A stretch of 55,646 bases of DNA from Macrostomum lignano (taxonomy: Eukaryota), in contig NIVC01002172.1 in NCBI GenBank assembly GCA_002269645.1, positions 1-55,646 of the forward strand, given 5' to 3'. Positions 239 through 55,474 of the stretch are shown in pieces; the stretch's first letter is position 1; every line of letters begins with the position of its first letter. The position numbers and the translations under genes were made by a program. The notes under the pieces are model-generated. The model did no database searches and was not told where the DNA came from. It was given only the letters and a program-made list of their open reading frames with translations.

Positions 239-524
239 CCCATGGCTTCGAATACAAAGGATGCTACAAAGATAGTAGAAATCGTGACCTGCCAAAACTG
301 CACAGTCATCGATCAGTAGAGCGTGGAGAGGTGTGGCCGTCTGTGCAGCTCGTACCGCTACTTCGGTGTGCAGTTCTCCAAGGAGTGCTGGTGCGGCAAC
401 TCGTACGGCAAGCACGGAAAGCGACCAGGACGCGAGTGCAACATGGCCTGCAGAGGCAACTCCAGAGAGAAGTGCGGCTCTCACTGGAGAAATAATGTCT
501 ATGCAACTCGGTCGACTGGCTCCC
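239..524 (+). CDS. WSC-domain exon with an internal frameshift near 305-322
   Basis: Acceptor cattgtag|CC and donor TCC C|gtgagt (phase 1-1). One frame reads HGFEYKGCYKDSRNRDLPK and the next reads VERCGRLCSSYRYFGVQFSKECWCGNSYG...CRGNSREKCGSHWRNNVY, the WSC 8-Cys pattern. Confidence 0.8.
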
Positions 525-3500
525 GTGAGTACATTCTCCGCATCAACACCTGAAAACGCTTGACATGACGCTGGCCAGAAAAGAGAGTACAGTATCGATA
601 TATACGCGCCGCTTGCCCTTGTAGACAGCACATGAACTGCAGGGTCCACCAATGAAAGGGTTAGCTTTAAAATCGCTGTCTCTCTAGGCTCAGTGGATCT
701 AAAATACACATTACTAGCTCGTACGTTTAGTTCTCCTTGACAGTGGTCGGCAAAAATTTATGGTCTATTTCAACTTGCAAGTAGCCTATTTAATGATGAC
801 ATGAGCGGTGGCCGATAGAATTACAAAATACAGTCACGTACTACGTACATGAAAGCTTAGAGAGGTGGCCAGACAAAGCGAAGAAAACGGGAGAGAATGA
901 TGTGCATTTACAATGCGTGCGGATAATATAGGTTACTTAGTTAGTGCCAGAGTTAGCATTCCCTACCCAAACACTATACGAGCGTATATCCAAGTTTCCT
1001 TGATGCATCTGTAATATAGCCCATTTTGATGAATCCTGACGGTGTCCACACGGAGTCAAAAAATATCCCGATGCCTTTGTCATCAGTTTAACTCCTTATG
1101 CATTTTGTGCTCACCAAATTCAATTGTGTTTTACAAATGCTCACTTGGCTTACTTTATTAAATTCGATTTGGATTTAAAGTTTTTAATATGCAGTTGCCG
1201 TTTCTAATATGCAACACTAGCTCGTAAAACTTACACTCAAATTTTGAATAATATTATGAAACGTTAAATGCCCACGAGCGCTAGGCTGCAAACGGGTGAG
1301 ATCTACACCGTCAAGCCTGTCGAGCTACAAGTCCAAGGTCGGTCAGTGCTTCGAGTTCCGAGTGACTGGTCGATTGAGAGGAAACGTGTGGGGGAGCGGG
1401 ATCTACACTGCCGACTCGTCGCTTAGCAAGGCCGCCGTACATGCAGGAATTGTGAGGAACGGCCAGACAAAGTACATCCGTGTTCGAGTGTTGAGGGTCG
1501 CAGCTCGTACCGATCCACTAGACGCAACGGCGTCAAGACGAGACGCTACGGCAGATACAGGCTTAGCTACAAGTTCATCGGCTCGCGATCGGTTCCTAGC
1601 AAGAAGCCTAGGTGTAAGTTTCGCTAGTCGTATGTCATGGTATTCTGAAGCTGTTTATAATGAAAATCACTTTGATTTCGATAAAATATACATTTCCTAT
1701 CGCCGACTGAGTTTTACGTTGCATGTGTAATCACAATGAAGAAAAAGTATAATATTTTTGCAGCATGCCCATCAGGATCAAGGTTGTCTGTGACCTCGCG
1801 TCGCACCTGCCGCTGTGCCCCGATATCTCCTGGACGGAAGTTGGGCTCGCTGATCTTTGTTATTGACATTACCGGAAGCATGGGAAGCGTGATTAACTCG
1901 GTAAAGAGCAACATCCGGCGAATTCTCTCTGCTAACACTCGATTTAGCAACTATGTTGTTGCAACCTTTGGCGATCCGTATGTGAGGCGAGTAATCAAGA
2001 CGAGGAGTATCACTGCTGTGAGAAACTTCCTGAAAAGATTGTCTGCCAGAGGAGGCGGTGACTGTCCCGAGTACGCTATGTCAGGAGCTCTGGATGCTGC
2101 AAAGAGCGCGGACTCGAACTCCGTCATGCTCCTGTTTACTGACGCTTCAGCCAAGGACAAGAGACGAGTGGGCCAGGTGTCTTCACTGGCGAAGAGGAAG
2201 CGAATTCGAGTGTTTACCGTCGAGAGCGGAAACATGTGTGGAAAAGCGCCAGAGTTTAAGCAGTTGGCCCGGAAGTCTTTTGGAGAGGTCTCCCGACTAC
2301 GATCTGGCACTTTCAACAAGGTAGGGCGTTTTATTAGAGATTCAGCTATGGCATGGCTTGCTCACGGACAACAAGAACAACGACAAACGTATAAGTATTT
2401 TCTACTCGTATTTCTATCCACAGTTGATGGAGTTCCTCAGACGCGCCGTAAAAGGAAGAATCAGCTTCAGCGCATTCCAAGAAGCCCGTCGGCGCTCAAA
2501 AAGGCTCTCAGAGGCAGTGAGTATTTCTTTTTAACATACCTTACATACGAGCAACAGTTGCAGCCAAGAGGATTATCCGTGGCATTGAAACCTACTCGTA
2601 ATTTACTACTTATGGTATGAAACAGGCGCGGAGCCTGTTAAATTGGATAATAATTTACTATAAAAGGGACTCCACAAACATCAGTTACCTGACAGTAACG
2701 ATTTCAATAATATAATTGCAGAATGCCGTTGTCGAACTGTCAGGCACCGTCGATGCAAACGATTTTCATCGCGTGAGTGCCAGATTATTTTTTATGGTGC
2801 AATACCACTATCTAAATTCGGCTTTTAAATAATATTATGAAACGTTAAATGCCCACGAGCGCTAGGCTGCAAACGGGTGAGATCTACACCGTCAAGCCTG
2901 TCGAGCTACAAGTCCAAGGTCGGTCAGTGCTTCGAGTTCCGAGTGACTGGTCGATTGAGAGGAAACGTGTGGGGGAGCGGGATCTACACTGCCGACTCGT
3001 CGCTTAGCAAGGCCGCCGTACATGCAGGAATTGTGAGGAACGGCCAGACAAAGTACATCCGTGTTCGAGTGTTGAGGGGTCGCAGCTCGTACCGATCCAC
3101 TAGACGCAACGGCGTCAAGACGAGACGCTACGGCAGATACAGGCTTAGCTACAAGTTCATCGGCTCGCGATCGGTTCCTAGCAAGAAGCCTAGGTGTAAG
3201 TTTCGCTAGTCGTATGTCATGGTATTCTGAAGCTGTTTATAATGAAAATCACTTTGATTTCGATAAAATATACATTTCCTATCGCCGACTGAGTTTTACG
3301 TTGCATGTGTAATCACAATGAAGAAAAAGTATAATATTTTTTGCAGCATGCCCATCAGGATCAAGGTTGTCTGTGACCTCGCGTCGCACCTGCCGCTGTG
3401 CCCCGATATCTCCTGGACGGAAGTTGGGCTCGCTGATCTTTGTTATTGACATTACCGGAAGCATGGGAAGCGTGATTATCTCGGTAAAGAGCAACATCCG

Positions 3501-6500
3501 GCGAATTCTCTCTGCTAACACTCGATTTAGCAACTATGTTGTTGCAACCTTTGGCGATCCGTATGTGAGGCGAGTAATCAAGACGAGGAGTATCACTGCT
3601 GTGAGAAACTTCCTGAAAAGATTGTCTGCCAGAGGAGGCGGTGACTGTCCCGAGTACGCTATGTCAGGAGCTCTGGATGCTGCAAAGAGCGCGGACTCGA
3701 ACTCCGTCATGCTCCTGTTTACTGACGCTTCAGCCAAGGACAAGAGACGAGTGGGCCAGGTGTCTTCACTGGCGAAGAGGAAGCGAATTCGAGTGTTTAC
3801 CGTCGAGAGCGGAAACATGTGTGGAAAAGCGCCAGAGTTTAAGCAGTTGGCCCGGAAGTCTTTTGGAGAGGTCTCCCGACTACGATCTGGCACTTTCAAC
3901 AAGGTAGGGCGTTTTATTAGAGATTCAGCTATGGCATGGCTTGCTCACGGACAACAAGAACAACGACAAACGTATAAGTATTTTCTACTCGTATTTCTAT
4001 CCACAGTTGATGGAGTTCCTCAGACGCGCCGTAAAAGGAAGAATCAGCTTCAGCGCATTCCCAAGAAGCCCGTCGGCGCTCAAAAAGGCTCTCAGAGGCA
4101 GTGAGTATTTCTTTTTAACATACCTTACATACGAGCAACAGTTGCAGCCAAGAGGATTATCCGTGGCATTGAAACCTACTCGTAATTTACTACTTATGGT
4201 ATGAAACAGGCGCGGAGCCTGTTAAATTGGATAATAATTTACTATAAAAGGGACTCCACAAACATCAGTTACCTGACAGTAACGATTTCAATAATATAAT
4301 TGCAGAATGCCGTTGTCGAACTGTCAGGCACCGTCGATGCAAACGAGTTTCATCGCGTGAGTGCCAGATTATTTTTTATGGTGCAATACCACTATCTAAA
4401 TTTGGCTTTTAAATAATATTAAACTAATCTATTAATTAAACTATAATTAAACTATAATAATATTACACTATATCTACTAATAGATGTCTCAATGAACAAT
4501 GGTTTATAGACTAGACTAATCCAAGAGAGGTGCGCGTGCCAGCCGATTGAATCTAGTTGGAGCCTTTAATATTCGTAGTCGTAACTAAAATGATGCCCTT
4601 CTGACCTTCCAGCGGCCGGAGTGAAGTACGTCGGCTGCTTCAAGGACAATCGCAACAGGGATTTGCCGGTAGTTTACACTGCCAACTACAAGACGACAAA
4701 GGCTTACTGCTTCCGCTATTGTCGAGCCAAGGGCTACAGGTACTTTGGTCTGCAAAACGGCAATGCGTGCACCTGCGGAAACACCGTCGGTCGGTATGGA
4801 AGAGCGTCGAGCAAGGATTGCGCCAGGTCCACCTGTAAGGGCGACAAGAGGTCCAAATGTGGTGGACCATGGAGGAACAGCGTCTTCACAACCGGACTGA
4901 AGCCCAAGAGCTTCAAGAGTAAGTGTGCAGTCAAGCAGAAAATTCGCTTTCCACGCTCGCTCGTAGGCTCGTAGGGTACATAAGCCTTTTTAAAGTAAAA
5001 CGGTGAAGTGAGACATTTTGGCCCTGAAAGTTTCAATCCAGTTTGAATGTATTTCCAACCAATGAACGCGCTCCAGCAAGCAAAAGCTGAGCACATGATC
5101 CCAGTCTTAGCTAATGAAAAGTAGACATCCTTTCCCTACAACAGACTGAACCTTCGGTTCCCCCGAACAATTAGAACCTACCATAGACTTGAGTTAATCT
5201 CGAGATTGCGAACACCAAATACAATACAACGGTCAGTAAGTTAACATCAATTGATTGCATCATCAGGAAAAGTTAGTCGAATCCGCCGCCTTAGTTATTT
5301 GGCTCTCACATTGGTAATTGAAGTTATTATTGAGCTTAGTAGTGAGAGATCAGAAGACCAAAGACACCCAAGTTATAGACATATATAAAAAATTTCAACG
5401 GGCTGGCTCTGTCCGTGTCTTGGATTAGGAGCCAACCAGCTGGGGTTTTACTGACCTGCGTGTGCCCACTATTTCTTTTTTAAGCACCTGGAATGTCTCA
5501 CATTGGCTGCTTTGTTGACGGCCGGAGGCGCGATCTTCCAACTGTGGGAGGAAAAGGCAGCATAACTGTTGGAAGGTGCTACGGACTGTGCAAGAAAAAG
5601 GGATTCCGATTCTTTGGCGTTCAGATAGGAAAACAGTGCTGGTGCGGCAACCACTACGGTCGCTACGGCCGACGCGACAAACGCGAGTGCCGCTACCAGT
5701 GCAGAGGAGACAAGACGACCTACTGTGGCGGCTCCTGGAGAAACGACGTGTACGCTACCGGACTCGAAGAGCACGCCTCCGGAGTTACCCTACTTGGCTG
5801 CTTCCGCGACAATTCGAAGCGCGACTTGCCCCTTGTACACGGCGCCGGTCACCGGACCACAAAGGCGTACTGTCTGAAGTACTGCAAGTCTCGCGGCTAC
5901 AGGTACTTTGGCCTCCAGGCTGGATCTGCGTGCACCTGCGGCAACAAATATGGCAGCTTTGGCCGAGTCAATGCAAAGCAGTGCAGAACGCGCTGTAGAG
6001 GCGACAAAAGACGAACCTGCGGCGGCTCTTGGAGAAACTCTGTCTACTCGACTGGAATCGGCAGCAAGCCTGTTCGTCGTGAGTACAACAGTACAGATTC
6101 GCAATTGATTGCTTTTTTGTCCACCTAGCTCGTGTTTATATTAGTTTGCAGCTCTCAGTTGAGAACTATGCGATGCCTCACTAATTGCGCGCGCCGTTTC
6201 TCTTCCTTCCATAAATACGAGTAGTTTCAAGCAATATAAGGTGGCTAATTTGAAATTGTGCGCAAATTAGTCTGACATCTTGAAACTTTAAATGCATTAA
6301 ATATCATCAGCGAAAGCGTGGGCGTCCAAGAGTTGAGCCTTTCTCATAAGTTGTTTACATAAACGACAGCAAATAATGTGTACAGTAGTAGTCTGTCGCT
6401 ACCGCTTTCAGTGCCCGGATTGAAGCATCTCGGCTGCTATCTGGACAAGAGCTCCAGAGATCTTAGAAAGCTGGTTCTCTCCGGATCAGTTACTGTGCCA

Positions 6501-9500
6501 AAGTGCTACAAGGCGTGCAAAGCCAGGAAATATCGCTTCTTCGGTGTGCAAAATGGCTACCAGTGCTGGTGCGGCAACCACTATGGCAGGTACAGAATCC
6601 GATCAAACTTGGAGTGCAGAGTACAGTGCAGAGGAGACAAGTCGACCTACTGCGGAGGCGCGTGGAGAAACAATGTCTACGCGACGGGTGTTGTCGTCGC
6701 CAGCAAAGGTAACCGAGTCTGTCAACAGGTTTACGCTTGTAGCTTTCTGGAGATCCAAGCAATCCTAGTGTACTGCTGTTTTTCGTTGCGCCATCTAGCC
6801 ATTTAGCCAGCAGCACTACTAATAGATGTCTCAATGAACAATGGTTTATAGACTAGACTAATCCAAGAGAGGTGGGCGATGCCAGCCGATTGAATCTAGT
6901 TGGAGCGTTTAATATTCGTAGTCGTAACTAAAATGATGCCCTTCTGATCTTCCAGCGGCCGGAGTGAAGTACGTCGGCTGCTTCAAGGACAATCGCTACA
7001 GGGATTTGCCGGTAGTTTACACTGCCAACTACAAGACGACAAAGGCTTACTGCTTCCGCTATTGTCGAGCCAAGGGCTACAGGTACTTTGGTCTGCAAAA
7101 CGGCAATGCGTGCACCTGCGGAAACACCGTCGGTCGGTATGGAAAGCGTCGAGCAAGGATTGCGCCAGGTCCACCTGTAAGGGCGACAAGAGGTCCAAAT
7201 GTGGTGGACCATGGAGGAACAGCGTCTTCACAACCGGACTGAAGCCCAAGAGCTTCAAGAGTAAGTGTGCAGTCAAGCAGAAAATTCGCTTTCCACGCTC
7301 GCTCGTAGGCTCGTACGGTATATTAGATATTTTTGAATGTAAAACGAGATTGCTCTGTACGGTTTGGATGGGGTTTTGCTGACCTGCATGTGCCCACTAT
7401 TTCTCTTTTAAGCACCTGGAATGTCTCACATTGGCTGCTTTGTTGACGGCCGGAGGCGCGATCTTCCAACTGTGGGAGGAAAAGGCAGCATAACTGTTGG
7501 AAGGTGCTACGGACTGTGCAAGAAAAAGGGATTCCGATTCTTTGGCGTTCAGATAGGAAAACAGTGCTGGTGCGGCAACCACTACGGTCGCTACGGCCGA
7601 CGCGACAAACGCGAGTGCCGCTACCAGTGCAGAGGAGACAAGACGACCTACTGTGGCGGCTCCTGGAGAAACGACGTGTACGCTACCGGACTCGAAGAGC
7701 ACGCCTCCGGAGTTACCCTACTTGGCTGCTTCCGCGACAATTCGAAGCGCGACTTGCCCCTTGTACACGGCGCCGGTCACCGGACCACAAAGGCGTACTG
7801 TCTGAAGTACTGCAAGTCTCGCGGCTACAGGTACTTTGGCCTCCAGGCTGGATCTGCGTGCACCTGCGGCAACAAATATGGCAGCTTTGGCCGAGTCAAT
7901 GCAAAGCAGTGCAGAACGCGCTGTAGAGGCGACAAAAGACGAACCTGCGGCGGCTCTTGGAGAAACTCTGTCTACTCGACTGGAATCGGCAGCAAGCCTG
8001 TTCGTCGTGAGTACAACAGTACAGATTCGCAATTGATTGCTTTTTTGTCCACCTAGCTCGTGTTTATATTAGTTTGCAGCTCTCAGTTGAGAACTATGCG
8101 ATGCCTCACTAATTGCGCGCGCCGTTTCTCTTCCTTCCATAAATACGAGTAGTTTCAAGCAATATAAGGTGGCTAATTTGAAATTGTGCGCAAATTAGTC
8201 TGACATCTTGAAACTTTAAATGCATTAAATATCATCAGCGAAAGCGTGGGCGTCCAAGAGTTGAGCCTTTCTCATAAGTTGTTTACATAAACGACAGCAA
8301 ATAATGTGTACAGTAGTAGTCTGTCGCTACCGCTTTCAGTGCCCGGATTGAAGCATCTCGGCTGCTATCTGGACAAGAGCTCCAGAGATCTTAGAAAGCT
8401 GGTTCTCTCCGGATCAGTTACTGTGCCAAAGTGCTACAAGGCGTGCAAAGCCAGGAAATATCGCTTCTTCGGTGTGCAAAATGGCTACCAGTGCTGGTGC
8501 GGCAACCACTATGGCAGGTACAGAATCCGATCAAACTTGGAGTGCAGAGTACAGTGCAGAGGAGACAAGTCGACCTACTGCGGAGGCGCGTGGAGAAACA
8601 ATGTCTACGCGACGGGTGTTGTCGTCGCCAGCAAAGGTAACCGAGTCTGTCAACAGGTTTACGCTTGTAGCTTTCTGGAGATCCAAGCAATCCTAGTGTA
8701 CTGCTGTTTTTCGTTGCGCCATCTAGCCATTTAGCCAGCAGCACTACTAATAGATGTCTCAATGAACAATGGTTTATAGACTAGAATAATCCAAGAGAGG
8801 TGGGCGATGCCAGCCGATTGAATCTAGTTGGAGCGTTTAATATTCGTAGTCGTAACTAAAATGATGCCCTTCTGATCTTCCAGCGGCCGGAGTGAAGTAC
8901 GTCGGCTGCTTTAAGGACAATCGCTACAGGGATTTGCCGGTAGTTTACACTGCCAACTACAAGACGACAAAGGCTTACTGCTTCCGCTATTGTCGAGCCA
9001 AGGGCTACAGGTACTTTGGTCTGCAAAACGGCAATGCGTGCACCTGCGGAAACACCGTCGGTCGGTATGGAAGAGCGTCGAGCAAGGATTGCGCCAGGTC
9101 CACCTGTAAGGGCGACAAGAGGTCCAAATGTGGTGGACCATGGAGGAACAGCGTCTTCACAACCGGACTGAAGCCCAAGAGCTTCAAGAGTAAGTGTGCA
9201 GTCAAGCAGAAAATTCGCTTTCCACGCTCGCTCGTAGGCTCGTACGGTATATTAGATATTTTTGAATGTAAAACGAGATTGCTCTGTACGGTTTGGATGG
9301 GGTTTTGCTGACCTGCATGTGCCCACTATTTCTCTTTTAAGCACCTGGAATGTCTCACATTGGCTGCTTTGTTGACGGCCGGAGGCGCGATCTTCCAACT
9401 GTGGGAGGAAAAGGCAGCATAACTGTTGGAAGGTGCTACGGACTGTGCAAGAAAAAGGGATTCCGATTCTTTGGCGTTCAGATAGGAAAACAGTGCTGGT

Positions 9501-39500: not shown

Positions 39501-42500
39501 TGCGGCAACCACTATGGCAGGTACAGAATCCGATCAAACTTGGAGTGCAGAGTACAGTGCAGAGGAGACAAGTCGACCTACTGCGGAGGCGCGTGGAGAA
39601 ACAATGTCTACGCGACGGGTGTTGTCGTCGCCAGCAAAGGTAACCGAGTCTGTCAACAGGTTTACGCTTGTAGCTTTCTGGAGATCCAAGCAATCCTAGT
39701 GTACTGCTGTTTTTCGTTGCGCCATCTAGCCATTTAGCCAGCAGCACTACTAATAGATGTCTCAATGAACAATGGTTTATAGACTAGACTAATCCAAGAG
39801 AGGTGGGCGATGCCAGCCGATTGAATCTAGTTGGAGCCTTTAATATTCGTAGTCGTAACTAAAATGATGCCCTTCTGATCTTCCAGCGGCCGGAGTGAAG
39901 TACGTCGGCTGCTTCAAGGACAATCGCTACAGGGATTTGCCGGTAGTTTACACTGCCAACTACAAGACGACAAAGGCTTACTGCTTCCGCTATTGTCGAG
40001 CCAAGGGCTACAGGTACTTTGGTCTGCAAAACGGCAATGCGTGCACCTGCGGAAACACCGTCGGTCGGTATGGAAAAGCGAAGAGCAAGGATTGCGCCAG
40101 GTCCACCTGTAAGGGCGACAAGAGGTCCAAATGTGGTGGACCATGGAGGAACAGCGTCTTCACAACCGGACTGAAGCCCAAGAGCTTCAAGAGTAAGTGT
40201 GCAGTCAAGCAGAAAATTCGCTTTCCACGCTCGCTCGTAGGCTCGTACGGTATATTAGATATTTTTGAATGTAAAACGAGATTGCTCTGTACGGTTTGGA
40301 TGGGGTTTTGCTGACCTGCATGTGCCCACTATTTCTCTTTTAAGCACCTGGAATGTCTCACATTGGCTGCTTTTTGACGGCCGGAGACGCGATCTTCCAA
40401 CTCTGGGAGGAAAAGGCAGCATGACTGTTGGAAGGTGCTACGGACTATGCAAGAAAAAGGGATTCCGATTCTTTGGCGTTCAGATAGGAAAACAGTGCTG
40501 GTGCGGCAACCACTACGGTCGCTACGGCCGACGCGACAAACGCGAGTGCCGCTACCAGTGCAGAGGAGACAAGACGACCTACTGTGGCGGCTCCTGGAGA
40601 AACGACGTGTACGCAACGGGTGTTGTCGTCGCCAGCAAAGGTAACCGAGTCTGTCAACAGGTTTACGCTTGTAGCTTTCTGGAGATCCAAGCAATCCTAG
40701 TGTACTGCTGTTTTTCGTTGCGCCATCTAGCCATTTAGCCAGCAGCACTACTAATAGATGTCTCAATGAACAATGGTTTATAGACTAGACTAATCCAAGA
40801 GAGGTGGGCGATGCCAGCCGATTAAATCTAGTTGGAGCCTTTAATATTCGTAGTCGTAACTAAAATGATGCCCTTCTGATCTTCCAGCGGCCGGAGTGAA
40901 GTACGTCGGCTGCTTCAAGGACAATCGCAACAGGGATTTGCCGGTAGTTTACACTGCCAACTACAAGACGACAAAGGCTTACTGCTTCCGCTATTGTCGA
41001 GCCAAGGGCTACAGGTACTTTGGTCTGCAAAACGGCAATGCGTGCACCTGCGGAAACACCGTCGGTCGGTATGGAAGAGCGTCGAGCAAGGATTGCGCCA
41101 GGTCCACCTGTAAGGGCGACAAGAGGTCCAAATGTGGTGGACCATGGAGGAACAGCGTCTTCACAACCGGACTGAAGCCCAAGAGCTTCAAGAGTAAGTG
41201 TGCAGTCAAGCAGAAAATTCGCTTTCCACGCTCGCTCGTAGGCTCGTAGGGTACATAAGACATTTTGTAAAGTAAAACGGTGAAGTGAGACATTTTGGCC
41301 CTGAAAGTTTCAATCCAGTTTGAATGTATTTCCAACCAATGAACGCGCTCCAGCAAGCAAAAGCTGAGCACATGATCCCAGTCTTAGCTAATGAAAAGTA
41401 GACATCCTTTCCCTACAACAGACTGAACCTTCGGTTCCCCCGAACAATTAGAACCTACCATAGACTTGAGTTAATCTCGAGATTGCGAACACCAAATACA
41501 ATACAACGGTCAGTAAGTTAACATCAATTGATTGCATCATCAGGAAAAGTTAGTCGAATCCGCCGCCTTAGTTATATGGCTCTCACATTGGTAATTGAAG
41601 TTATTATTGAGCTTAGTAGTGAGAGATCAGAAGACCAAAGACACCCAAGTTATAGACATATATAAAAAATTTCAACGGGCTGGCTCTGTCCGTGTCTTGG
41701 ATTAGGAGCCAACCAGCTGGGGTTTTACTGACCTGCGTGTGCCCACTATTTCTTTTTTAAGCACCTGGAATGTCTCACATTGGCTGCTTTGTTGACGGCC
41801 GGAGGCGCGATCTTCCAACTGTGGGAGGAAAAGGCAGCATAACTGTTGGAAGGTGCTACGGACTGTGCAAGAAAAAGGATTCCGATTCTTTGGCGTTCAG
41901 ATAGGAAAACAGTGCTGGTGCGGCAACCACTACGGTCGCTACGGCCGACGCGACAAACGCGAGTGCCGCTACCAGTGCAGAGAGACAAGACGACCTACTG
42001 TGGCGGCTCCTGGAGAAACGACGTGTACGCTACCGGACTCGAAGAGCACGCCTCCGGAGTTACCCTACTTGGCTGCTTCCGCGACAATTCGAAGCGCGAC
42101 TTGCCCCTTGTACACGGCGCCGGTCACCGGACCACAAAGGCGTACTGTCTGAAGTACTGCAAGTCTCGCGGCTACAGGTACTTTGGCCTCCAGGCTGGAT
42201 CTGCGTGCACCTGCGGCAACAAATATGGCAGCTTTGGCCGAGTCAATGCAAAGCAGTGCAGAACGCGCTGTAGAGGCGACAAAAGACGAACCTGCGGCGG
42301 CTCTTGGAGAAACTCTGTCTACTCGACTGGAATCGGCAGCAAGCCTGTTCGTCGTGAGTACAACAGTACAGATTCGCAATTGATTGCTTTTTTGTCCACC
42401 TAGCTCGTGTTTATATTAGTTTGCAGCTCTCAGTTGAGAACTATGCGATGCCTCACTAATTGCGCGCGCCGTTTCTCTTCCTTCCATAAATACGAGTAGT

Positions 42501-45500
42501 TTCAAGCAATATAAGGTGGCTAATTTGAAATTGTGCGCAAATTAGTCTGACATCTTGAAACTTTAAATGCATTAAATATCATCAGCGAAAGCGTGGGCGT
42601 CCAAGAGTTGAGCCTTTCTCATAAGTTGTTTACATAAACGACAGCAAATAATGTGTACAGTAGTAGTCTGTCGCTACCGCTTTCAGTGCCCGGATTGAAG
42701 CATCTCGGCTGCTATCTGGACAAGAGCTCCAGAGATCTTAGAAAGCTGGTTCTCTCCGGATCAGTTACTGTGCCAAAGTGCTACAAGGCGTGCAAAGCCA
42801 GGAAATATCGCTTCTTCGGTGTGCAAAATGGCTACCAGTGCTGGTGCGGCAACCACTATGGCAGGTACAGAATCCGATCAAACTTGGAGTGCAGAGTACA
42901 GTGCAGAGGAGACAAGTCGACCTACTGCGGAGGCGCGTGGAGAAACAATGTCTACGCGACGGGTGTTGTCGTCGCCAGCAAAGGTAACCGAGTCTGTCAA
43001 CAGGTTTACGCTTGTAGCTTTCTGGAGATCCAAGCAATCCTAGTGTACTGCTGTTTTTCGTTGCGCCATCTAGCCATTTAGCCAGCAGCACTACTAATAG
43101 ATGTCTCAATGAACAATGGTTTATAGACTAGACTAATCCAAGAGAGGTGGGCGATGCCAGCCGATTGAATCTAGTTGGAGCGTTTAATATTCGTAGTCGT
43201 AACTAAAATGATGCCCTTCTGATCTTCCAGCGGCCGGAGTGAAGTACGTCGGCTGCTTCAAGGACAATCGCTACAGGGATTTGCCGGTAGTTTACACTGC
43301 CAACTACAAGACGACAAAGGCTTACTGCTTCCGCTATTGTCGAGCCAAGGGCTACAGGTACTTTGGTCTGCAAAACGGCAATGCGTGCACCTGCGGAAAC
43401 ACCGTCGGTCGGTATGGAAAAGCGAAGAGCAAGGATTGCGCCAGGTCCACCTGTAAGGGCGACAAGAGGTCCAAATGTGGTGGACCATGGAGGAACAGCG
43501 TCTTCACAACCGGACTGAAGCCCAAGAGCTTCAAGAGTAAGTGTGCAGTCAAGCAGAAAATTCGCTTTCCACGCTCGCTCGTAGGCTCGTACGGTATATT
43601 AGATATTTTTGAATGTAAAACGAGATTGCTCTGTACGGTTTGGATGGGGTTTTGCTGACCTGCATGTGCCCACTATTTCTCTTTTAAGCACCTGGAATGT
43701 CTCACATTGGCTGCTTTGTTGACGGCCGGAGACGCGATCTTCCAACTCTGGGAGGAAAAGGCAGCATGACTGTTGGAAGGTGCTACGGACTATGCAAGAA
43801 AAAGGGATTCCGATTCTTTGGCGTTCAGATAGGAAAACAGTGCTGGTGCGGCAACCACTACGGTCGCTACGGCCGACGCGACAAACGCGAGTGCCGCTAC
43901 CAGTGCAGAGGAGACAAGACGACCTACTGTGGCGGCTCCTGGAGAAACGACGTGTACGCTACCGGACTCGAAGAGCACGCCTCCGGAGTTACCCTACTTG
44001 GCTGCTTCCGCGACAATTCGAAGCGCGACTTGCCCCTTGTACACGGCGCCGGTCACCGGACCACAAAGGCGTACTGTCTGAAGTACTGCAAGTCTCGCGG
44101 CTACAGGTACTTTGGCCTCCAGGCTGGATCTGCGTGCACCTGCGGCAACAAATATGGCAGCTTTGGCCGAGTCAATGCAAAGCAGTGCAGAACGCGCTGT
44201 AGAGGCGACAAAAGACGAACCTGCGGCGGCTCTTGGAGAAACTCTGTCTACTCGACTGGAATCGGCAGCAAGCCTGTTCGTCGTGAGTACAACAGTACAG
44301 ATTCGCAATTGATTGCTTTTTTGTCCACCTAGCTCGTGTTTATATTAGTTTGCAGCTCTCAGTTGAGAACTATGCGATGCCTCACTAATTGCGCGCGCCG
44401 TTTCTCTTCCTTCCATAAATACGAGTAGTTTCAAGCAATATAAGGTGGCTAATTTGAAATTGTGCGCAAATTAGTCTGACATCTTGAAACTTTAAATGCA
44501 TTAAATATCATCAGCGAAAGCGTGGGCGTCCAAGAGTTGAGCCTTTCTCATAAGTTGTTTACATAAACGACAGCAAATAATGTGTACAGTAGTAGTCTGT
44601 CGCTACCGCTTTCAGTGCCCGGATTGAAGCATCTCGGCTGCTATCTGGACAAGAGCTCCAGAGATCTTAGAAAGCTGGTTCTCTCCGGATCAGTTACTGT
44701 GCCAAAGTGCTACAAGGCGTGCAAAGCCAGGAAATATCGCTTCTTCGGTGTGCAAAATGGCTACCAGTGCTGGTGCGGCAACCACTATGGCAGGTACAGA
44801 ATCCGATCAAACTTGGAGTGCAGAGTACAGTGCAGAGGAGACAAGTCGACCTACTGCGGAGGCGCATGGAGAAACAACGTGTTTACAACTGGATATAATC
44901 CGAAAGCCTCAGGTGGGTCGGTTGTACAGAATTATTCAGGAATATAAAGTAGTTTCAAATGTGCGAATATTGCTTATATTTCAGTGAAAACCTGCCCATC
45001 GGGATCGAAGGCAACGACTGTGAAGCGCCTTGTATGTGGCTGTGCCCCCGCTTCGGGATCTCAGAGGCTTGGTTCTTTGGTGATTGTTGTCGACACAACG
45101 GGCAGCATGAGCAGTGTTTATAAATCTGTCCGCCGTAGCATTTCAAGGATTTTGTCGTCAAACAGGCGGTTCCAGAATTTTGTTGTTTCAAGCTACGGGG
45201 ATCCTTATAAGCGGCACGTCATTCGAACAAAATCCATTTCGAGGGTTCAGCGATTTCTCAACGGGCTTAAAATTAGAGGTGGTGGCGATTGTCCTGAGTA
45301 TTCAATGTCTGCCGTGATTGACGCGGCGAAATTGGCTGATAAAGATTCTGTTTTGCTTCTGTTTACTGATGCATCGGCTAAGGACCGCAGTTTGACGTCT
45401 AGTGCAGCAAAGTTGTTGAAGTCGAAACGAATTCGTTTCATCGCAATCGGCAGCGGTCGTCTTTGTGGCCGCGGTGCTGAGTATGATGTTCTCGCGAAAA

Positions 45501-46282
45501 ATACTGGTGGACTGGTAGCCAAGTTGAACCGTCGAGTTTCCGATAAGGTGACAGTTGAAATGGTATCTCTGTGACTGTACTTTTCCTTTCATTTTACATT
45601 ATAACGTATTCGGATTTTTTAATTTTTAGGTGATGAAACTAATTGAACTAGCAGCTAAAGGGAAAATGAGCTTCAGTGCTTTCCCGAAGAATACTCGCGA
45701 TCTTGCTAATGCTCTGAGAGGAAGTAAGTTTTTAATCCGGGTTTATTGCTTCTACGAGCTATTTCTTATATTTTGTTGCGGCTGACGCTGCTTAATGTTT
45801 CCAAAATTATTTTCAGAATGCCCGTGCCGAACTGTGACGCGTCATATCTGCGCGATGCCACATTCAGGTGAGAGTCTGTAATAGTCTTTATTCGGGTTGT
45901 GCATGTTGAGATTCTATGCTCACGGGTTAATTTATTTTGCGGCTTTAGCGTCAGTGGTAATTAGATTACTTTCCTTTTACTTTAACAGTATGATTTTTGT
46001 TCATTTTTAGCTTCGCTTGGGTGCTTCCTGGACGATCCCAAGTACCCAGACTTCTCGGTTGTTGCTGGCCGGGGCAAGATGACAGTGTGGAAGTGCAACA
46101 ACCTGTGCAAAGCTAAGAAGTTCTCGTATTTCGGTCTAAAGAACGGCTCGAAGTGCAGCTGCGGTGACAACTACGGAAACAGTGGCGGTGCAAAAGAGTC
46201 CAAGTGCAACAAACGCTGCTCTGGAAATTCCAAAGACAAATGCGGCGGCACCGCGACCAATAGCGTCTACAAGGTTGACTAA
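239..46282 (+). CDS. Giant multi-exon WSC-repeat / LCCL / VWA extracellular protein (5' end outside window)
   Basis: Manual splicing gives one phase-consistent chain: WSC exon 239-524; LCCL, VWA and two linker exons twice (1285-2772, 2866-4356); 61 WSC exons (4613-44912); VWA and linkers (44985-45867); terminal WSC exon 46011-46282 ending in TAA. No start codon or signal peptide is in the window. A few copies carry 1-nt deletions. Confidence 0.85.
1285..1613 (+). CDS. LCCL-domain exon, copy 1 (1-nt deletion near 1497)
   Basis: VWGSGIYTADSSLSKAAVHAG matches the LCCL signature. It is 329 nt versus 330 nt in copy 2 (GAGGGTCG vs GAGGGGTCG). Donor AGG T|gtaagt. Confidence 0.8.
1764..2320 (+). CDS. 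VWA-domain exon (hemicentin/VWA7 type), copy 1
   Basis: LIFVIDITGSMG, FGDP, GGGDCPEYAMSG and LLFTDASAKD are hemicentin-1/VWA7-like VWA motifs. Acceptor tttttgcag|, donor AAG|gtaggg. Confidence 0.88.
2424..2772 (+). CDS. Two small post-VWA exons, copy 1 (2424-2516 and 2722-2772)
   Basis: LMEFLRRAVKGRISFSAF-PRSPSALKKALRG (1-nt deletion relative to copy 2) and KCRCRTVRHRRCKRFSS. Canonical splice sites, and homologous exons occur at 45630-45723 and 45817-45867. Confidence 0.7.
2866..3195 (+). CDS. LCCL-domain exon, copy 2 (intact, 330 nt)
   Basis: GCKRVRSTPSSLSSYKSKVGQCFEFRVTGRLRGNVWGSGIYTADSSLSKAAVHAGIVRNG...YKFIGSRSVPSKKPR; phase 1-1. Confidence 0.85.
3347..3903 (+). CDS. VWA-domain exon (hemicentin/VWA7 type), copy 2
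   Basis: Same 557-nt exon as copy 1 with an N-to-I change; DITGSM, GGGDCPE and FTDASAKD motifs. Confidence 0.88.
4007..4356 (+). CDS. Two small post-VWA exons, copy 2 (4007-4100 and 4306-4356)
   Basis: LMEFLRRAVKGRISFSAFPRSPSALKKALRG and KCRCRTVRHRRCKRVSS; phases 0-1 and 1-1 link in frame to the first WSC array exon. Confidence 0.75.
4613..6708 (+). CDS. WSC unit A(long intron)-B-C: exons 4613-4918, 5485-6078, 6412-6708
   Basis: Acceptors ttccag|CGGCC, ttttaag|CACCT and ctttcag|TGCCC; donors AAG A|gtaagt, CGT C|gtgagt and AAA G|gtaacc. Each domain has the 8 WSC cysteines and the G-x-W-R-N-x-V-Y/F end. Confidence 0.9.
6956..12494 (+). CDS. Three A-B-C units (short intron): 6956-7260/7413-8006/8340-8636; 8884-9189/9342-9935/10269-10565; 10813-11118/11271-11864/12198-12494
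   Basis: 1928-1929-bp periodicity in the ORF track. The A copy at 6956 has a 1-nt deletion (GGAAAGCGTCG). Confidence 0.9.
12742..22525 (+). CDS. Alternating A-D and A(long)-B-C units: 12742-13047/13200-13496; 13742-14047/14616-15209/15543-15839; 16087-16392/16545-16841; 17089-17394/17962-18555/18889-19185; 19433-19738/19891-20184; 20431-20735/21303-21896/22229-22525
   Basis: The higher-order period is about 3345-3347 bp (13750 to 17097). D at 19891 lacks one codon (GGW vs GGSW), and A at 20431 has a 1-nt deletion. Confidence 0.88.
22772..28797 (+). CDS. Units 22772-23077/23230-23823/24157-24453 (variant A,B); 24701-25006/25159-25455; 25703-26008/26577-27170/27504-27800; 28048-28353/28506-28797
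   Basis: Same exon types. The last D has a 5-nt deletion near its 3' end. Confidence 0.85.
29030..29325 (+). pseudogene. Degraded A-type WSC exon (multiple small deletions; probable assembly artefact)
   Basis: About 10 nt shorter than A, with a damaged acceptor (cttctgtag) and frameshifts. It jumps at ~29370 from the A-B intron into the C/D-A intron. Confidence 0.6.
29500..35781 (+). CDS. Units 29500-29805/30373-30966/31300-31596; 31843-32148/32301-32597; 32845-33150/33719-~34263 (B truncated); 34560-35151 (B, 5' indels)/35485-35781
   Basis: Same exon types, with a scrambled junction at 34262-34330. Confidence 0.78.
36029..44912 (+). CDS. Units 36029-36334/36487-37080/37414-37710; 37958-38263/38416-39009/39343-39639; 39887-40192/40345-40640; 40888-41193/41762-42353/42687-42983; 43231-43536/43689-44282/44616-44912
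   Basis: Same exon types. D at 40345 has one 1-nt deletion and B at 41762 has two. The last C has a unique tail (NNVFTTGYNPKAS G|gtgggt). Confidence 0.85.
44985..45547 (+). CDS. Second-type VWA exon (hemicentin/VWA7 type)
   Basis: KTCPSGS...LGSLVIVVDTTGSMSS...YGDP...GGGDCPEYSMSA...LLFTDASAKD; acceptor atttcag|TG, donor AAG|gtgaca, the same intron position as in the 5' VWA exons. Confidence 0.9.
45630..45867 (+). CDS. Two small post-VWA exons (45630-45723 and 45817-45867)
   Basis: VMKLIELAAKGKMSFSAFPKNTRDLANALRG and KCPCRTVTRHICAMPHS; same lengths (94 and 51 nt) and phases as the 5' paralogous exons. Confidence 0.82.
46011..46282 (+). CDS. Terminal WSC-domain exon with stop codon
   Basis: tttttag|CT TCG: SLGCFLDDPKYPDFSVVAGRGKMTVWKCNNLCKAKKFSYFGLKNGSKCSCGDNYG...CNKRCSGNSKDKCGGTATNSVYKVD*. 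Confidence 0.88.
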
Positions 46283-46368: not shown

Positions 46369-46374
46369 ATTAAA
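46369..46374 (+). promoter_or_regulatory. Possible polyadenylation signal (ATTAAA) of the WSC gene
   Basis: The variant hexamer lies about 90 nt after the stop in AT-rich sequence; no transcript support is available. Confidence 0.3.
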
Positions 46375-53400: not shown

Positions 53401-54297
53401 GGGCGCTTTTGTCCTGTCATTCCTCGTAGTAGCAATGGAGTACATTGGCTACATAATCGGGCTTCAGGTTCAGCGAACTGTAAGCTGCCATTACTGAATG
53501 CTTTTTTATTGCTTCATGGCAATTACATTTCTGATTGCTTCCCTCGGATAGTCTTACTACCCACACTACCCAGGGGCTGTAGCCTAGTGGTTAGAGCGTC
53601 GGACTCGCGACTGAAAGGTCTGGGGTTCGATTCTCGATCCCACTTGGAATAATTTGTGTCCTTGAGCAAGACTTTAACTCTTCATTGCTTCAGTTCACCC
53701 AGCTGTAAAATGGGTGCCAGCATTAGCTAGGGTAACTGAGGGTGTGTGGCGACACCCCAGTCCTTGTACTGAACAGCCGTACGCAGCCTTCAGATGCGCC
53801 GCGCAATAGCTGCGGCTGAGCTATCGGTTGCACATCTGCTGATTGGTGCAGGTGTAATCAATTATTGTTATGTCACTACCCATGCTACTTTGTAAGTAGC
53901 ATATTGTGTAAATAGTATGATGTCACAGCAACGTTTTACTCTGGCAGAGAGCCGACCCGGACTTGGAATTCAACAAGGCCTACCGCGCCCTCGTCACCAG
54001 CATCACCCCGACCGGAGTCTACGTGAAGCTGCACGGCGAGAAGATTCATACCGAATCAGATGCTGTCCCCAGATGCGTCCAAGGTGAGGCCTTATGCTCG
54101 CATGCTATATTTGGGCTTGAATCCAAAATTTGCAGACTGCTTACCAACTCTTTAAACAATCACACAATTGCAGGGCATGACAGCCTCGGATCTGCAGATT
54201 TCATGCGGCTCTATTGATCGAGATCACCTACCTGGGCAACGATCCGCCGAAGGCTACCGAATCTTCCACAGGCGTGGCTGAGACACTCGGGCGCTGA
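47439..54297 (+). CDS. Divergent ionotropic glutamate receptor-family subunit (~850 aa, 13 exons)
   Basis: Exons 47439-47517 (signal peptide MPGRASALFLIVASLWGACSA), 47609-47747, 47999-48271, 48725-48906, 49407-49460, 49549-49740, 50464-50580, 51000-51095, 51308-51451, 52260-53110, 53296-53479, 53948-54083 and 54174-54297 (or 54217). It shows S1 (EADM...LTI...VSFS..P), FLSP pre-M1, M1-M2-M3, S2 with a Cys pair and M4 (VAGIFMVL). The exon 2/3 junction and the last two exons need frame corrections. Confidence 0.85.
48336..48690. repeat. 55-bp minisatellite, about 6.4 copies, in iGluR intron 3
   Basis: AAAGCATTGTACCTCAAGCTAAGTGCAGGGTCTTTTCTACTCACAACTAAAAATC starts at 48336, 48391, 48446, 48501, 48556, 48611 and 48666 (partial). 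Confidence 0.95.
49818..50275. mobile_element. Foldback/MITE-like element with ~180-190-bp inverted arms
   Basis: The left arm (CTACGGTCTTTGGAAATTTTTAGGAGGC...TACGGAGAATGGAG...TGTAAGCAAAA) is the reverse complement of the right arm (TTTTGCTTACA...TTCCATTCTCCGTA...GCCTCCTAAAAGTTTCCAAGGACCGTAG). Non-coding and AT-rich. Confidence 0.8.
50685..50857. repeat. Small hairpin/MITE-like inverted repeat
   Basis: Perfect 18-bp inverted pair GACCAAACCGACTGCAAT (50724-50741) / ATTGCAGTCGGTTTGGTC (50797-50814), with degenerate outer arms. Confidence 0.75.
51640..52000. mobile_element. MITE-like inverted-repeat element in iGluR intron
   Basis: 51671-51698 and 51948-51975 are inverted with 25/28 matches, and both ends carry CCCTACTGGGGGTT. 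Confidence 0.6.
52260..53110 (+). CDS. iGluR core exon: end of S1, M1, M2, M3 and most of S2
   Basis: ORF 52269-53114: DFLSPLYPLTWNVWFAIIAAFIILSATLYLTDKISP, SSRIFILILWF, FTNMQGL, NINNRIQELSDRGELEQIKNK; acceptor ccttag|GAA, donor AA|gtaagt. Confidence 0.92.
53573..53873 (+). mobile_element. tRNA-derived CORE-type SINE with 9-bp target-site duplication
   Basis: tRNA-like head with A box TAGCCTAGTGG and B box GGTTCGATTC. TGTGTCCTTGAGCAAGACTTTAAC...TCAGTT...CTGTAAAATGGG resembles the CORE (MIR-type) domain. CACTACCCA flanks both sides (53564-53572, 53874-53882). Confidence 0.85.
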
Positions 54298-55190: not shown

Positions 55191-55474
55191 AGTGATCGAC
55201 GTAGCCAGGAATTTTAATTGGGGGGGGGGGCGGGTTGGCCTGGCTGGCCATGCCTCATGCCATTGCCACTTTTAGCGCCGCAGGCACTCATTTAAGCGCC
55301 GCAAGCACTCATTTAAGCGCCGCAGGCACTCATTTAAGCGCCGCAGGCACTCAATCGCCTCATGGTTTTTGGTACCCGCCACGCCCAACCCCACCCCCCA
55401 GGTGGGGTGTCTTGCAGGTGGGGTGAAGTTGCCGCCCAACGATTGTTAAGGCGGCCTCCCTGGCTACACCACTA
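55191..55474. mobile_element. MITE with GTAGCCAGG/CCTGGCTAC terminal inverted repeats and an internal 21-bp tandem repeat
   Basis: GTAGCCAGG at 55201-55209 and CCTGGCTAC at 55459-55467, a poly-G tract, and TTTAAGCGCCGCAGGCACTCA x4 at ~55270-55353. Confidence 0.65.

What the first reader, a model, noticed from the sequence alone, without database searches (positions are those of the whole stretch)
239..46282. Giant (~8,800 aa in window) protein with about 79 WSC domains bracketed by LCCL and hemicentin-type VWA domains
Seen: 23 A + 16 B (x2) + 15 C + 7 D exons give 77 array WSC domains, plus one at each end, two LCCL and three VWA domains, with no transmembrane segment before the stop. About 3 of these domains lie in suspected assembly artefacts. 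Established: WSC is a glycan-binding module usually present in one to a few copies; LCCL occurs in cochlin and Limulus factor C; hemicentin-type VWA mediates matrix assembly. Inference: a secreted, multivalent glycan-binding filament with VWA cross-linking ends, a candidate mucus, glue, cocoon or barrier protein with an architecture I do not recognise.
Basis: partly seen in the sequence, partly recalled or inferred. Interest (0 to 1): 0.85.

Follow-up and report, generated by a model that had tools for sequence, protein, structure and literature searches.

The report
Giant secreted WSC-repeat protein gene, flatworm
This is a real gene of the flatworm Macrostomum lignano that encodes a roughly 1-MDa secreted, strongly positively charged chain of about 75-79 sugar-binding-type (WSC) modules; its architecture has not been described, its exact repeat number depends on an error-prone assembly, and its tissue and function are untested.

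Summary
On the + strand, 239-46282 contains 74 AG/GT-bounded exons. The array has 23 A, 16 B (two WSC each), 15 C and 7 D exons, which gives 77 WSC domains. There is one more WSC at each end, plus two LCCL and three hemicentin-type VWA (Pfam VWA_4) domains, then a TAA stop. No transmembrane segment is present.

The window is Macrostomum lignano DNA. A sister assembly supplies the missing 5' exon, which carries a signal peptide.

Three caveats apply:
- The reading frame is not intact as assembled. Twelve exons carry small indels, almost all 1-bp deletions typical of old PacBio consensus, and two stretches are stutter duplications.
- The LCCL-VWA module is a 1.58-kb tandem duplicate. It is single-copy in the other assembly, which was built from the same reads.
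- That other assembly also gives a different array unit, so copy number is uncertain.

The idealised product is 8,801 aa, with pI about 10.1, net charge about +1,395 and 7.5% Cys. The best reading is a secreted, multivalent, polycationic lectin-like matrix or gel protein from an unidentified gland. It is not the known adhesives Mlig-ap1/ap2. No protein with the same architecture was found. I rate it a new variant of a known kind, of moderate interest.

The parts
239..524 (+). Exon 1 in the window: the first WSC domain. It is 286 bp here and frameshifted by two 1-bp deletions. The signal-peptide exon lies about 330-420 bp upstream of window position 1.
   Evidence: The same exon is intact (288 bp) in L001 10667-10954.
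1285..2772 (+). LCCL-VWA module, copy 1. Exons: LCCL 1285-1613 (329 bp, 1-bp deletion in a G run); VWA_4 1764-2320; linker 2424-2516 (93 bp, 1-bp deletion in a C run); 51-bp CxC exon 2722-2772.
2866..4356 (+). LCCL-VWA module, copy 2, with all four exons intact: LCCL 2866-3195, VWA_4 3347-3903, linker 4007-4100, CxC exon 4306-4356. Region 2823-4421 is a 99.6% tandem duplicate of 1242-2837.
   Evidence: cochlin LCCL 1JBI, E 2e-6; VWA fold.
4613..44912 (+). WSC exon array: 23 A, 16 B, 15 C and 7 D exons. Units are [A' B C] 2343 bp (x1), S = [A B C] 1929 bp (x7, including the last) and L = [A D A' B C] about 3345 bp (x7, two of them with stutter insertions). The last C exon (44616-44912) has a variant 3' end.
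28976..29436 (+). Suspected assembly stutter 1: an extra, degraded A exon (29030-29325, 10 bp of deletions), next to a 5-bp deletion at the end of the D exon at 28791.
33782..34620 (+). Suspected assembly stutter 2: an 839-bp partial re-duplication of a B exon. B at 33719 loses its 3' end and its GT donor. B at 34560 has three small indels at its 5' end.
44985..45867 (+). C-terminal VWA_4 module: VWA exon 44985-45547, linker exon 45630-45723 and CxC exon 45817-45867. All are intact.
46011..46282 (+). Last exon: the final WSC domain and stop codon TAA (46280-46282). ATTAAA follows at 46369.

Best explanation
[quoted passage not shown] In public annotations it appears only as unconnected fragments.

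Its product is: signal peptide (exon just 5' of the window) - WSC - one or two [LCCL - VWA_4 - helical linker - CxC peptide] modules - roughly 74-77 WSC domains - VWA_4 - linker - CxC - WSC - stop.

Every array exon is a symmetrical phase-1 cassette that encodes one or two whole WSC domains. The exons sit in 1.9-3.3 kb units that are at least 99.3% identical, introns included. The array therefore grew, and is still being homogenised, by recent unequal crossing-over. The D exon, a B/C hybrid, is a footprint of that process.

Most frame-breaking indels are consensus errors of an old PacBio assembly and are not real mutations.

Inferred mechanism: the mature protein is a disulfide-rich beads-on-a-string polymer of about 0.9-1 MDa. 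It has about 80 lectin-type WSC modules and a net charge near +1,400. After secretion from a gland it would bind polyanionic or glycan partners with very high avidity, for example sulphated glycans of flatworm secretions or surfaces. Its terminal VWA (MIDAS-type), LCCL and CxC modules would link molecules to each other or to other matrix proteins. The result would be a gel, glue, plug or coat.

Shown: gene structure, domain identities, folds, charge and a secretion signal.

Inferred: ligand, polymerisation, tissue and biological role.
For: Species and locus:
- Peptides are identical to M. lignano models P0012, P0001 and P0044.
- There is 97.7-99% DNA identity to Mlig_3_7 contig NIVC01000784.1.

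Gene structure:
- 74 exons have AG/GT borders and compatible phases.
- The GenBank models are derived from RNA-seq (PMC5730564). They splice signal exon > WSC > LCCL > VWA at the junctions I predicted. A 931-aa WSC model continues into the array.

Domains:
- Pfam finds WSC, LCCL and VWA_4 above their cut-offs.
- All six WSC types keep 8 Cys at 36-47% identity to one another.
- The AF2 model of a B exon has pLDDT 94.5. It superposes on the Kremen WSC (5FWS/5FWT, rmsd 1.1-1.3 A) and on yeast Wsc1 (7PZ2).
- The VWA part has pLDDT about 90 and matches ITIH1, integrin I-domains, ANTXR2 and mussel PTMP1.
- The VWA exons carry a D-x-T-x-S ... GGGDCPE ... FTDA MIDAS-like motif.

Errors versus decay:
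- L units differ by 0-2 substitutions but by up to 11 indel columns.
- All small array lesions are deletions.
- The window is broken where L001 is intact (exon 1, LCCL, linker). L001 is broken in the VWA exon where the window is intact. Most of these lesions lie in homopolymer runs.
- REAPR rated only 32% of ML2 bases and 64% of Mlig_3_7 bases as error-free.

Older constraint:
- A related organism's genomic contig (L002) keeps the B-C-A exon order with open frames at 60-76% aa identity. The introns align much worse.

Physical properties:
- 8,801 aa, 984 kDa, pI 10.1, net +1,395, Cys 7.5%, K+R 20.7%, Gly 13.5%, Tyr 6.7%, no TM segment.

Context:
- Flatworm slime and rhabdite structures are rich in sulphated GAGs (PMC5450325).
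- M. lignano adhesion is sensitive to charge: negatively charged sugars inhibit adhesion (PMC6410801).
- Small WSC proteins are numerous among tail-specific transcripts in a screen for seminal-fluid proteins, and one is confirmed as prostate-gland-specific.
Against: - No transcript or peptide spanning the head, the array and the tail was available. The GenBank annotation splits the locus into separate models.
- The frame is broken 11 times as assembled.
- One frameshifted A exon (305 bp) is base-for-base identical in the window (6956) and in L001 (20501), so at least that lesion may be real. However, both assemblies use the same PacBio reads.
- Array organisation differs between the two assemblies. 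The window has 1929/3345-bp units. L001 has a 2345-bp unit and a single LCCL-VWA module. The domain count is therefore not established.
- The ligand, tissue and function are entirely untested.
- The LCCL part gave a low-confidence model.
Confidence: 0.6

Rival explanations
1. The gene is real but its size is largely an assembly artefact. The true locus would have far fewer units and a single LCCL-VWA module. The 40-kb array and the head duplication would then come from mis-tiling of near-identical PacBio CLR reads, or from haplotype or paralogue copies placed in tandem.
For: - The same reads assembled with Canu (Mlig_3_7) give one LCCL-VWA module and a different, 2345-bp unit.
- Two stutter duplications with dense indels lie inside the array.
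- Units are at least 99.3% identical over 1.9-3.3 kb, so no read of that era could anchor the unit order across 40 kb.
- ML2 was rated 32% error-free.
Against: - Variant haplotypes are consistent. K-type A exons always precede the short intron. A'-type exons always follow a D exon and precede the long intron. All seven L units show the same pattern, which looks like a real higher-order repeat.
- L001 also carries at least 4 units and runs on beyond the fetched stretch, with a 931-aa WSC model.
- Two different ML2 gene models (P0001 and P0058, which differ in sequence) both show the order VWA > LCCL > VWA. That order requires the module duplication.
- The L001 unit could itself be a collapse of the L unit.
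Confidence: 0.3
2. The locus is a decaying or pseudogenised array. The frameshifts would be real, so at most a short N-terminal fragment is made.
For: - Eleven frame-breaking lesions are present.
- The identical frameshifted A exon occurs in both assemblies.
Against: - Lesions are almost all 1-bp deletions, while substitutions are near zero.
- The two assemblies are broken at different places.
- 52 of the 61 array exons and the whole tail are intact with good splice sites.
- RNA-seq-derived models exist for the locus.
- All exons are phase 1-1, so skipping a defective exon keeps the reading frame.
Confidence: 0.07
3. The array is a bank of alternatively spliced cassette exons, or several trans-spliced genes, that yields many small WSC proteins and no giant one.
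For: - All exons are symmetrical phase-1 cassettes, so any subset can be joined in frame.
- M. lignano makes many WSC transcripts of about 1 kb, and it trans-splices polycistronic precursors.
Against: - The cassettes are nearly identical, so choosing among them would create no diversity.
- Array exons have no start codon with a signal peptide of their own.
- The one small WSC transcript whose sequence I could compare (RNA815_80.4) is a different, AT-rich gene.
Confidence: 0.05

Closest known systems
WSC-domain proteins: yeast Wsc1-3 sensors, fungal WSC lectins and WSC-bearing oxidases, animal Kremen1/2, polycystin-1, WSCD1/2, and the small M. lignano WSC proteins that are prostate-gland or seminal-fluid candidates
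   Same: - The same domain by Pfam.
- The same 8-Cys pattern.
- The same fold by AF2 and Foldseek against Kremen 5FWS and Wsc1 7PZ2.
- It belongs to a WSC family that is clearly expanded in M. lignano.
   Different: - Known members carry one to a few WSC domains, by my own knowledge. The longest WSC-only hits in the searches were 685 aa or shorter. This gene has about 75-79.
- It has no TM segment, kringle, CUB or sulfotransferase part.
- It is extremely basic.
Cochlin (LCCL followed by VWA domains; extracellular matrix and innate-defence protein)
   Same: - The same N-terminal order, LCCL then VWA.
- The LCCL exon matches the cochlin LCCL structure 1JBI at E 2e-6.
- Both are secreted.
   Different: - The VWA here is the hemicentin-like VWA_4 type, not the cochlin type.
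- The spliced LCCL begins after the usual first cysteines and lacks the Cys of the 'C-G-A-A-V-H' motif (SKAAVHAG here; read from the spliced sequence, compared with cochlin from my own knowledge).
- Cochlin has no WSC array.
Hemicentin-1 (N-terminal VWA of the VWA_4 type)
   Same: - VWA_4 (PF25106) is the best-scoring family for all three VWA exons.
- Xenopus hemicentin-1 is a distant hit, at 30% identity and E 2e-6.
- Both are giant tandem-domain secreted proteins.
   Different: - No Ig, G2F, EGF or fibulin-type modules are present.
- The nearest VWA_4 relatives are all M. lignano paralogues, e.g. BOX15_Mlig022224g1 (4,112 aa, two VWA_4 plus VWD).
Mlig-ap1 and Mlig-ap2, the giant repetitive adhesive proteins of M. 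lignano
   Same: - The same animal.
- Very large, cysteine-rich, highly repetitive and secreted.
- Mlig-ap1 is also extremely cationic, and its action depends on charge and glycans (PMC6410801).
   Different: - The domain sets are entirely different. Mlig-ap1 has KR regions, a C-type lectin domain, vWD/C8/TIL and EGF. Mlig-ap2 has vWD, TIL, LDLR, TSP1 and 221/255-aa repeats.
- Neither has WSC, LCCL or VWA_4.
- Expression of the present gene in adhesive glands is unknown.

Membership tests
WSC domain (Pfam PF01822) | Profile match above the curated cut-off | tested here: met
   A, B (two stretches), C, D and the last exon score 60-123 bits against a cut-off of 27.8. Exon 1 failed Pfam only because of its frameshift. 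Its two halves match a WSC HMM, and the intact L001 copy is annotated as WSC.
WSC domain (Pfam PF01822) | Eight conserved cysteines and a PAN/apple-like fold | tested here: met
   Eight invariant Cys are found in all six domain types. The AF2 model has pLDDT 94.5. Foldseek top hits are Kremen WSC 5FWS/5FWT (rmsd 1.1-1.3 A), Wsc1 7PZ2 and a glyoxal oxidase WSC.
WSC domain (Pfam PF01822) | Carbohydrate binding | not testable with these tools
   This needs recombinant protein tested on glycan arrays or in heparin or GAG binding assays.
LCCL domain (Pfam PF03815) | Profile match above the cut-off, and similarity to a solved LCCL domain | tested here: met
   Copy 2 scores 56.9 bits and copy 1 scores 36.7 bits, against a cut-off of 22.6. 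The cochlin structure 1JBI matches at E 2.1e-6.
LCCL domain (Pfam PF03815) | Complete domain with the canonical disulfide cysteines and fold | tested here: inconclusive
   The RNA-supported acceptor puts the exon start at CKRVRST..., after the in-frame KCPRALGC. The Pfam match covers profile positions 12-93 of 96. The AF2 confidence for this part is below 50.
Hemicentin-type VWA (Pfam PF25106, VWA_4) | Best profile match, VWA Rossmann-like fold and a MIDAS-type motif | tested here: met
   VWA_4 scores 104-117 bits, against 30-40 bits for the generic VWA families. The AF2 pLDDT is about 90, and Foldseek matches ITIH1, integrin I-domains and ANTXR2. The motif D(I/T)TGS ... GGGDCPE ... FTDASAKD is present in all three copies.
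Hemicentin / fibulin-6 protein family | Long Ig-domain array, a G2F domain, EGF repeats and a fibulin-type C-terminus | tested here: not met
   No such domains were found in any exon ORF. Only the VWA type is shared.
Gel-forming mucins | VWD-C8-TIL assemblies and Pro/Thr/Ser-rich O-glycosylated repeats | tested here: not met
   No VWD, C8 or TIL hits were found. Composition is S 6.9%, T 6.0% and P 2.4%. The repeats are folded, Cys-rich domains.
M. lignano adhesive proteins Mlig-ap1/ap2 | Published domain composition and repeat sequences | tested here: not met
   The published domains do not overlap with WSC, LCCL or VWA_4. Only two papers in the searched library mention both WSC and Macrostomum, and neither is an adhesion paper.

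The most novel reading that the evidence does not exclude
The locus encodes what may be the largest WSC-domain array yet seen: about 75-80 lectin-type modules in a polycationic protein of about 1 MDa. This would be an uncharacterised structural component of a flatworm secretion, such as mucus or rhabdites, cement, or a seminal or mating secretion. It would work by high-avidity, charge-assisted condensation of sulphated glycans. Its module number would change quickly by unequal crossing-over, giving copy-number polymorphism between lines and paralogous chromosomes.
Probability: 0.3. Interest if true: 0.7.

Novelty: new variant of a known kind. Interest (0 to 1): 0.55.

Why it matters
M. lignano is a model for temporary bioadhesion, for regeneration and for sexual conflict through seminal fluid. 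Only two giant secreted proteins (Mlig-ap1 and Mlig-ap2) have been worked out in it so far.

A third protein of megadalton class, built from lectin-type modules and carrying a huge positive charge, would be a concrete candidate for a missing glycan-binding or cohesive partner in one of its secretions. It can be tested directly with the ISH, RNAi and transgenic tools that already exist for this species.

It would also be a clean example of very recent domain-array expansion by exon-cassette amplification.

Finally, it is a warning for annotation. Both public gene sets break this locus into small 'hypothetical proteins', because of homopolymer errors and repeat filtering.

Tried and rejected
- Known adhesives: Mlig-ap1 and Mlig-ap2 have different domains. 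Rejected.
- Prostate transcript RNA815_80.4 (two WSC domains): its sequence in the supplement is a different, AT-rich gene of 969 nt. The other WSC transcripts in Weber et al. Table S1 have no sequences held, so they could not be mapped.
- I tried to measure the array length in Mlig_3_7 through the downstream glutamate-receptor gene. The only homologue in the protein database is a Logan transcript-like contig (P0057), so no second anchor was obtained. Only 12.3 kb of the Mlig_3_7 gene could be fetched.
That listing is dominated by multi-LCCL proteins, so the absence of the architecture elsewhere is only weakly supported.
- The AF2 model of the LCCL part was low-confidence.
- No tRNA or Rfam family occurs in the window.
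- The repeated minus-strand ORFs (101-192 aa) have no Pfam match and are mirror images of the coding frame.
- Comparing the two LCCL-VWA copies with L001 did not show which copy is the 'extra' one.
- Literature searches found nothing that links WSC domains to flatworm mucus or to marine adhesives.
Full report
**What is in the sequence**

The window is eukaryotic DNA of about 48-50% G+C across the array. Stop-to-stop ORFs on the + strand repeat with very high regularity.

I took one unit (8884-10565) as reference and defined three exons by their splice sites:
- A: 306 bp, one WSC domain.
- B: 594 bp, two WSC domains.
- C: 297 bp, one WSC domain.

All three are phase 1-1.

blastn and semi-global alignment then located 23 A, 16 B, 15 C and 7 D copies. 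D consists of the first 271 nt of B joined to the last 26 nt of C, and it is followed by C's downstream intron. All copies have AG/GT borders except the truncated B at 33719.

Pfam confirms WSC for each exon type and for the last exon. It confirms LCCL for 1260-1727 and 2841-3206. For the three VWA exons, VWA_4 is the best family.

An HMM of the six WSC types finds 74 uninterrupted and 5 frameshift-split WSC segments on the + strand. It finds none on the - strand. Minus-strand ORFs have no domain.

The gene model in the window has 74 exons and 26,363 nt:
- Exon 1 (239-524).
- Two modules of four exons each: LCCL, VWA, linker and a 51-bp CxC exon.
- The array (4613-44912).
- A third VWA module (44985-45867).
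- A last WSC exon that ends in TAA at 46280-46282. ATTAAA lies 87 nt further on.

**Whose gene it is**

Protein searches hit Macrostomum lignano almost exclusively at the top. Stretches are identical to the window's translation: P0012, P0001 and P0044 (= BOX15_Mlig023956g1).

The contig that carries P0044 is Mlig_3_7 NIVC01000784.1, fetched as locus L001. It aligns with the window at 97.7-99% identity.

P0044 is a transcript-derived model, because the GenBank annotation of Mlig_3_7 comes from a genome-guided RNA-seq assembly (PMC5730564). It joins a signal-peptide exon (…MLPTMAQAGWCLLFAICLGGITA|S…) to the first WSC exon, then to the LCCL exon at exactly the weak acceptor I had inferred (…STGSR|CKRVRST…), and then to the VWA exon.

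Window position 1 corresponds to L001 10417, and the signal exon is at L001 10001-10090. The missing 5' exon therefore lies about 330-420 bp outside the window.

**Integrity of the reading frame**

As assembled, the frame fails at codon 84.

Lesions in the head:
- Two 1-bp deletions in exon 1.
- A G-run contraction in LCCL copy 1.
- A C-run contraction in linker copy 1.

Lesions in the array, affecting nine exons:
- A at 6956 (-1).
- D at 19891 (-3, in-frame).
- A at 20431 (-1).
- D at 28506 (-5).
- A at 29030 (-10).
- B at 33719 (truncated).
- B at 34560 (net -2).
- D at 40345 (-1).
- B at 41762 (-2).

Three observations indicate that most of these are consensus errors:
- L units differ from each other by 0-2 substitutions in 3,345 bp but by up to 11 indel columns. 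Every small array lesion is a deletion.
- Against L001, the window is broken where L001 is intact (exon 1, LCCL, linker). L001 is broken in C runs of the VWA exon where the window is intact. That is why the GenBank model ends in …CRCARYLLDGSWAR.
- Both assemblies derive from the same PacBio CLR data. REAPR rated them 32% (ML2) and 64% (Mlig_3_7) error-free.

P0001, a WormBase-ParaSite model, reproduces the window's intron read-through and its module duplication. The window therefore behaves like ML2.

One lesion may be real. The 305-bp frameshifted A exon is identical in the window (6956) and in L001 (20501).

Two larger defects are partial re-duplications with dense indels, at about 28976-29436 and about 33782-34620.

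**How reliable the numbers are**

The head module 1242-2837 is repeated at 2823-4421 with 99.6% identity. In L001 it is single. Two different ML2 models, P0001 and P0058, both have the order VWA > LCCL > VWA, so the duplication is not peculiar to one contig. Comparison with L001 does not resolve the matter.

The window's array consists of:
- One [A' B C] unit of 2343 bp.
- Seven S units of 1929 bp, counting the last one.
- Seven L units of about 3345 bp.

L001 shows at least four [A B C] units of 2345 bp, in which K-type A exons precede the long intron. That combination is never seen in the window. It could be a collapse of the L unit, or a real paralogue or haplotype. Mlig_3_7 still holds 180 Mb of duplicated blocks that are at least 95% identical.

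No read of that generation spans 40 kb of 99.3-100% identical units. The 79/2/3 domain count is therefore a property of this assembly. Removing both stutters and one module gives about 76 WSC, 1 LCCL, 2 VWA and about 8,160 aa.

**Age and constraint**

The six WSC types are only 36-47% identical to one another, yet all keep eight cysteines. A resembles B2, and B1 resembles C. The four-domain unit is therefore old and probably arose from a two-domain unit.

The units, in contrast, are almost identical, introns included. That means very recent amplification or ongoing homogenisation. The D exon is a B/C crossover product.

Genomic contigs from three public runs (L002-L004, organism not identified) carry B-like, C-like and A-like exons in the same order and spacing. 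Their frames are open and they show 60-76% amino-acid identity, while the introns align poorly. A second M. lignano array paralogue also exists (P0014, 55% identity).

**Folds**

- The AF2 model of a B exon has pLDDT 94.5 and shows two compact domains. Foldseek places them on the Kremen WSC (5FWS/5FWT, rmsd 1.1-1.3 A), yeast Wsc1 (7PZ2) and a glyoxal oxidase WSC.
- The VWA part of P0001 has pLDDT about 90. It matches ITIH1, integrin I-domains, ANTXR2 and the mussel byssus protein PTMP1. All three VWA exons carry D(I/T)TGS…GGGDCPE…FTDA.
- The LCCL exon matches cochlin 1JBI by sequence, but its AF2 model was poor.

**Properties of the product**

For this calculation, broken exons were replaced by the consensus of their type and exon 1 was taken from L001. 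The chain is then 8,801 aa and 984 kDa. Its pI is 10.1, with K+R minus D+E equal to +1,395. Composition is 7.5% Cys, 13.5% Gly and 6.7% Tyr. It has one N-glycosylation sequon and no TM-like segment. Each WSC module alone carries a net charge of about +14 to +18.

**Interpretation**

The structure points to a secreted, disulfide-stabilised beads-on-a-string protein whose main features are multivalency and positive charge. By established knowledge of the family, WSC domains bind carbohydrates in fungi and mediate extracellular protein contacts in Kremen. Binding here is inferred, not shown.

Likely partners are polyanionic glycans:
- Planarian slime and rhabdite structures are rich in sulphated GAGs (PMC5450325).
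- M. lignano adhesion is inhibited by negatively charged sugars (PMC6410801).

The terminal VWA, LCCL and CxC modules are the obvious candidates for linking molecules together.

The tissue is unknown. Small WSC proteins are conspicuous among M. lignano tail-specific transcripts screened as seminal-fluid candidates, and one, RNA815_80.4, is confirmed as prostate-gland-specific. A reproductive secretion is therefore as plausible as mucus or cement.

The gene is not Mlig-ap1 or Mlig-ap2. It is not RNA815_80.4 either.

**Comparison and novelty**

All the domains are known. The LCCL-then-VWA order recalls cochlin, and the VWA type recalls hemicentin. The size and repetitiveness recall Mlig-ap2 and other giant matrix proteins. 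The gene fails the protein-level definitions of hemicentin, of gel-forming mucins and of the Mlig adhesives.

Neither the word-indexed search of 5.8 billion proteins nor the exhaustive phmmer search of 1.8 billion representatives found another protein that combines LCCL, VWA_4 and WSC, apart from M. lignano fragments of this same gene. No WSC-only hit exceeded 685 aa. These searches are not exhaustive for architecture.

I class it as a new variant of a known kind, a giant tandem-domain secreted protein. Interest is moderate because the assembly is uncertain and expression data are missing.

Noticed in passing
window 52269-54089 (+): The downstream neighbour is an ionotropic-glutamate-receptor-like gene. 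Pfam finds Lig_chan in ORF 52260-53111. A 391-aa Logan protein (P0057, about 77-89% identical) aligns in four blocks, so at least three further exons lie at 53294-54089.
   Followed up: partly
window 48323-48689: A tandem repeat of a 55-bp unit, 6.7 copies at 95% identity, lies in the intergenic or intronic space between the WSC gene and the receptor gene.
   Followed up: no
window 55270-55353: A short tandem repeat of a 21-bp unit (TTTAAGCGCCGCAGGCACTCA), 4 copies.
   Followed up: no
window 49826-49953 and 50139-50268: An inverted repeat of about 130 bp at about 81% identity with a spacer of about 185 bp. It may be a small foldback or MITE-like element.
   Followed up: no
L001 12269 and 12516 (Mlig_3_7 NIVC01000784.1): The GenBank model BOX15_Mlig023956g1 is 'partial' and ends in an out-of-frame tail (…CRCARYLLDGSWAR). 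The Mlig_3_7 sequence lacks one C in each of two C runs of the VWA exon where the window is intact. The public annotation of this gene is therefore truncated by assembly errors.
   Followed up: yes
window 2841-2865 and 1260-1284: The LCCL reading frame stays open for 8 codons (NVKCPRALG) upstream of the RNA-supported acceptor (ctag|GC). These codons include the 'CP..GC' motif expected near the start of an LCCL domain, and no AG acceptor lies further upstream before the in-frame stop. The domain's N-terminus may have been lost from the mature protein, or the small preceding CxC exon may substitute for it.
   Followed up: partly
proteins P0063, P0002, P0003, P0061 (M. lignano): M. lignano has a family of paralogues built from tandem [VWA_4 - linker - CxC] modules. 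One is a 4,112-aa protein with two VWA_4 domains plus a VWD domain (BOX15_Mlig022224g1). The nearest relatives of this gene's VWA are all within the species.
   Followed up: partly
L005 (Logan ERR11809035), protein P0013: A 430-aa protein with four WSC domains is 40% identical to the flatworm unit over 97% of its length. It sits next to an ExbD gene, so it is probably bacterial. This is an unexpectedly close bacterial WSC array.
   Followed up: no
L002-L004 (Logan SRR31628425, SRR31628392, SRR31628393): Genomic contigs from an unidentified, related organism carry the same B-C-A exon order at 60-76% amino-acid identity. This is a ready-made orthologue for testing conservation of the array.
   Followed up: partly
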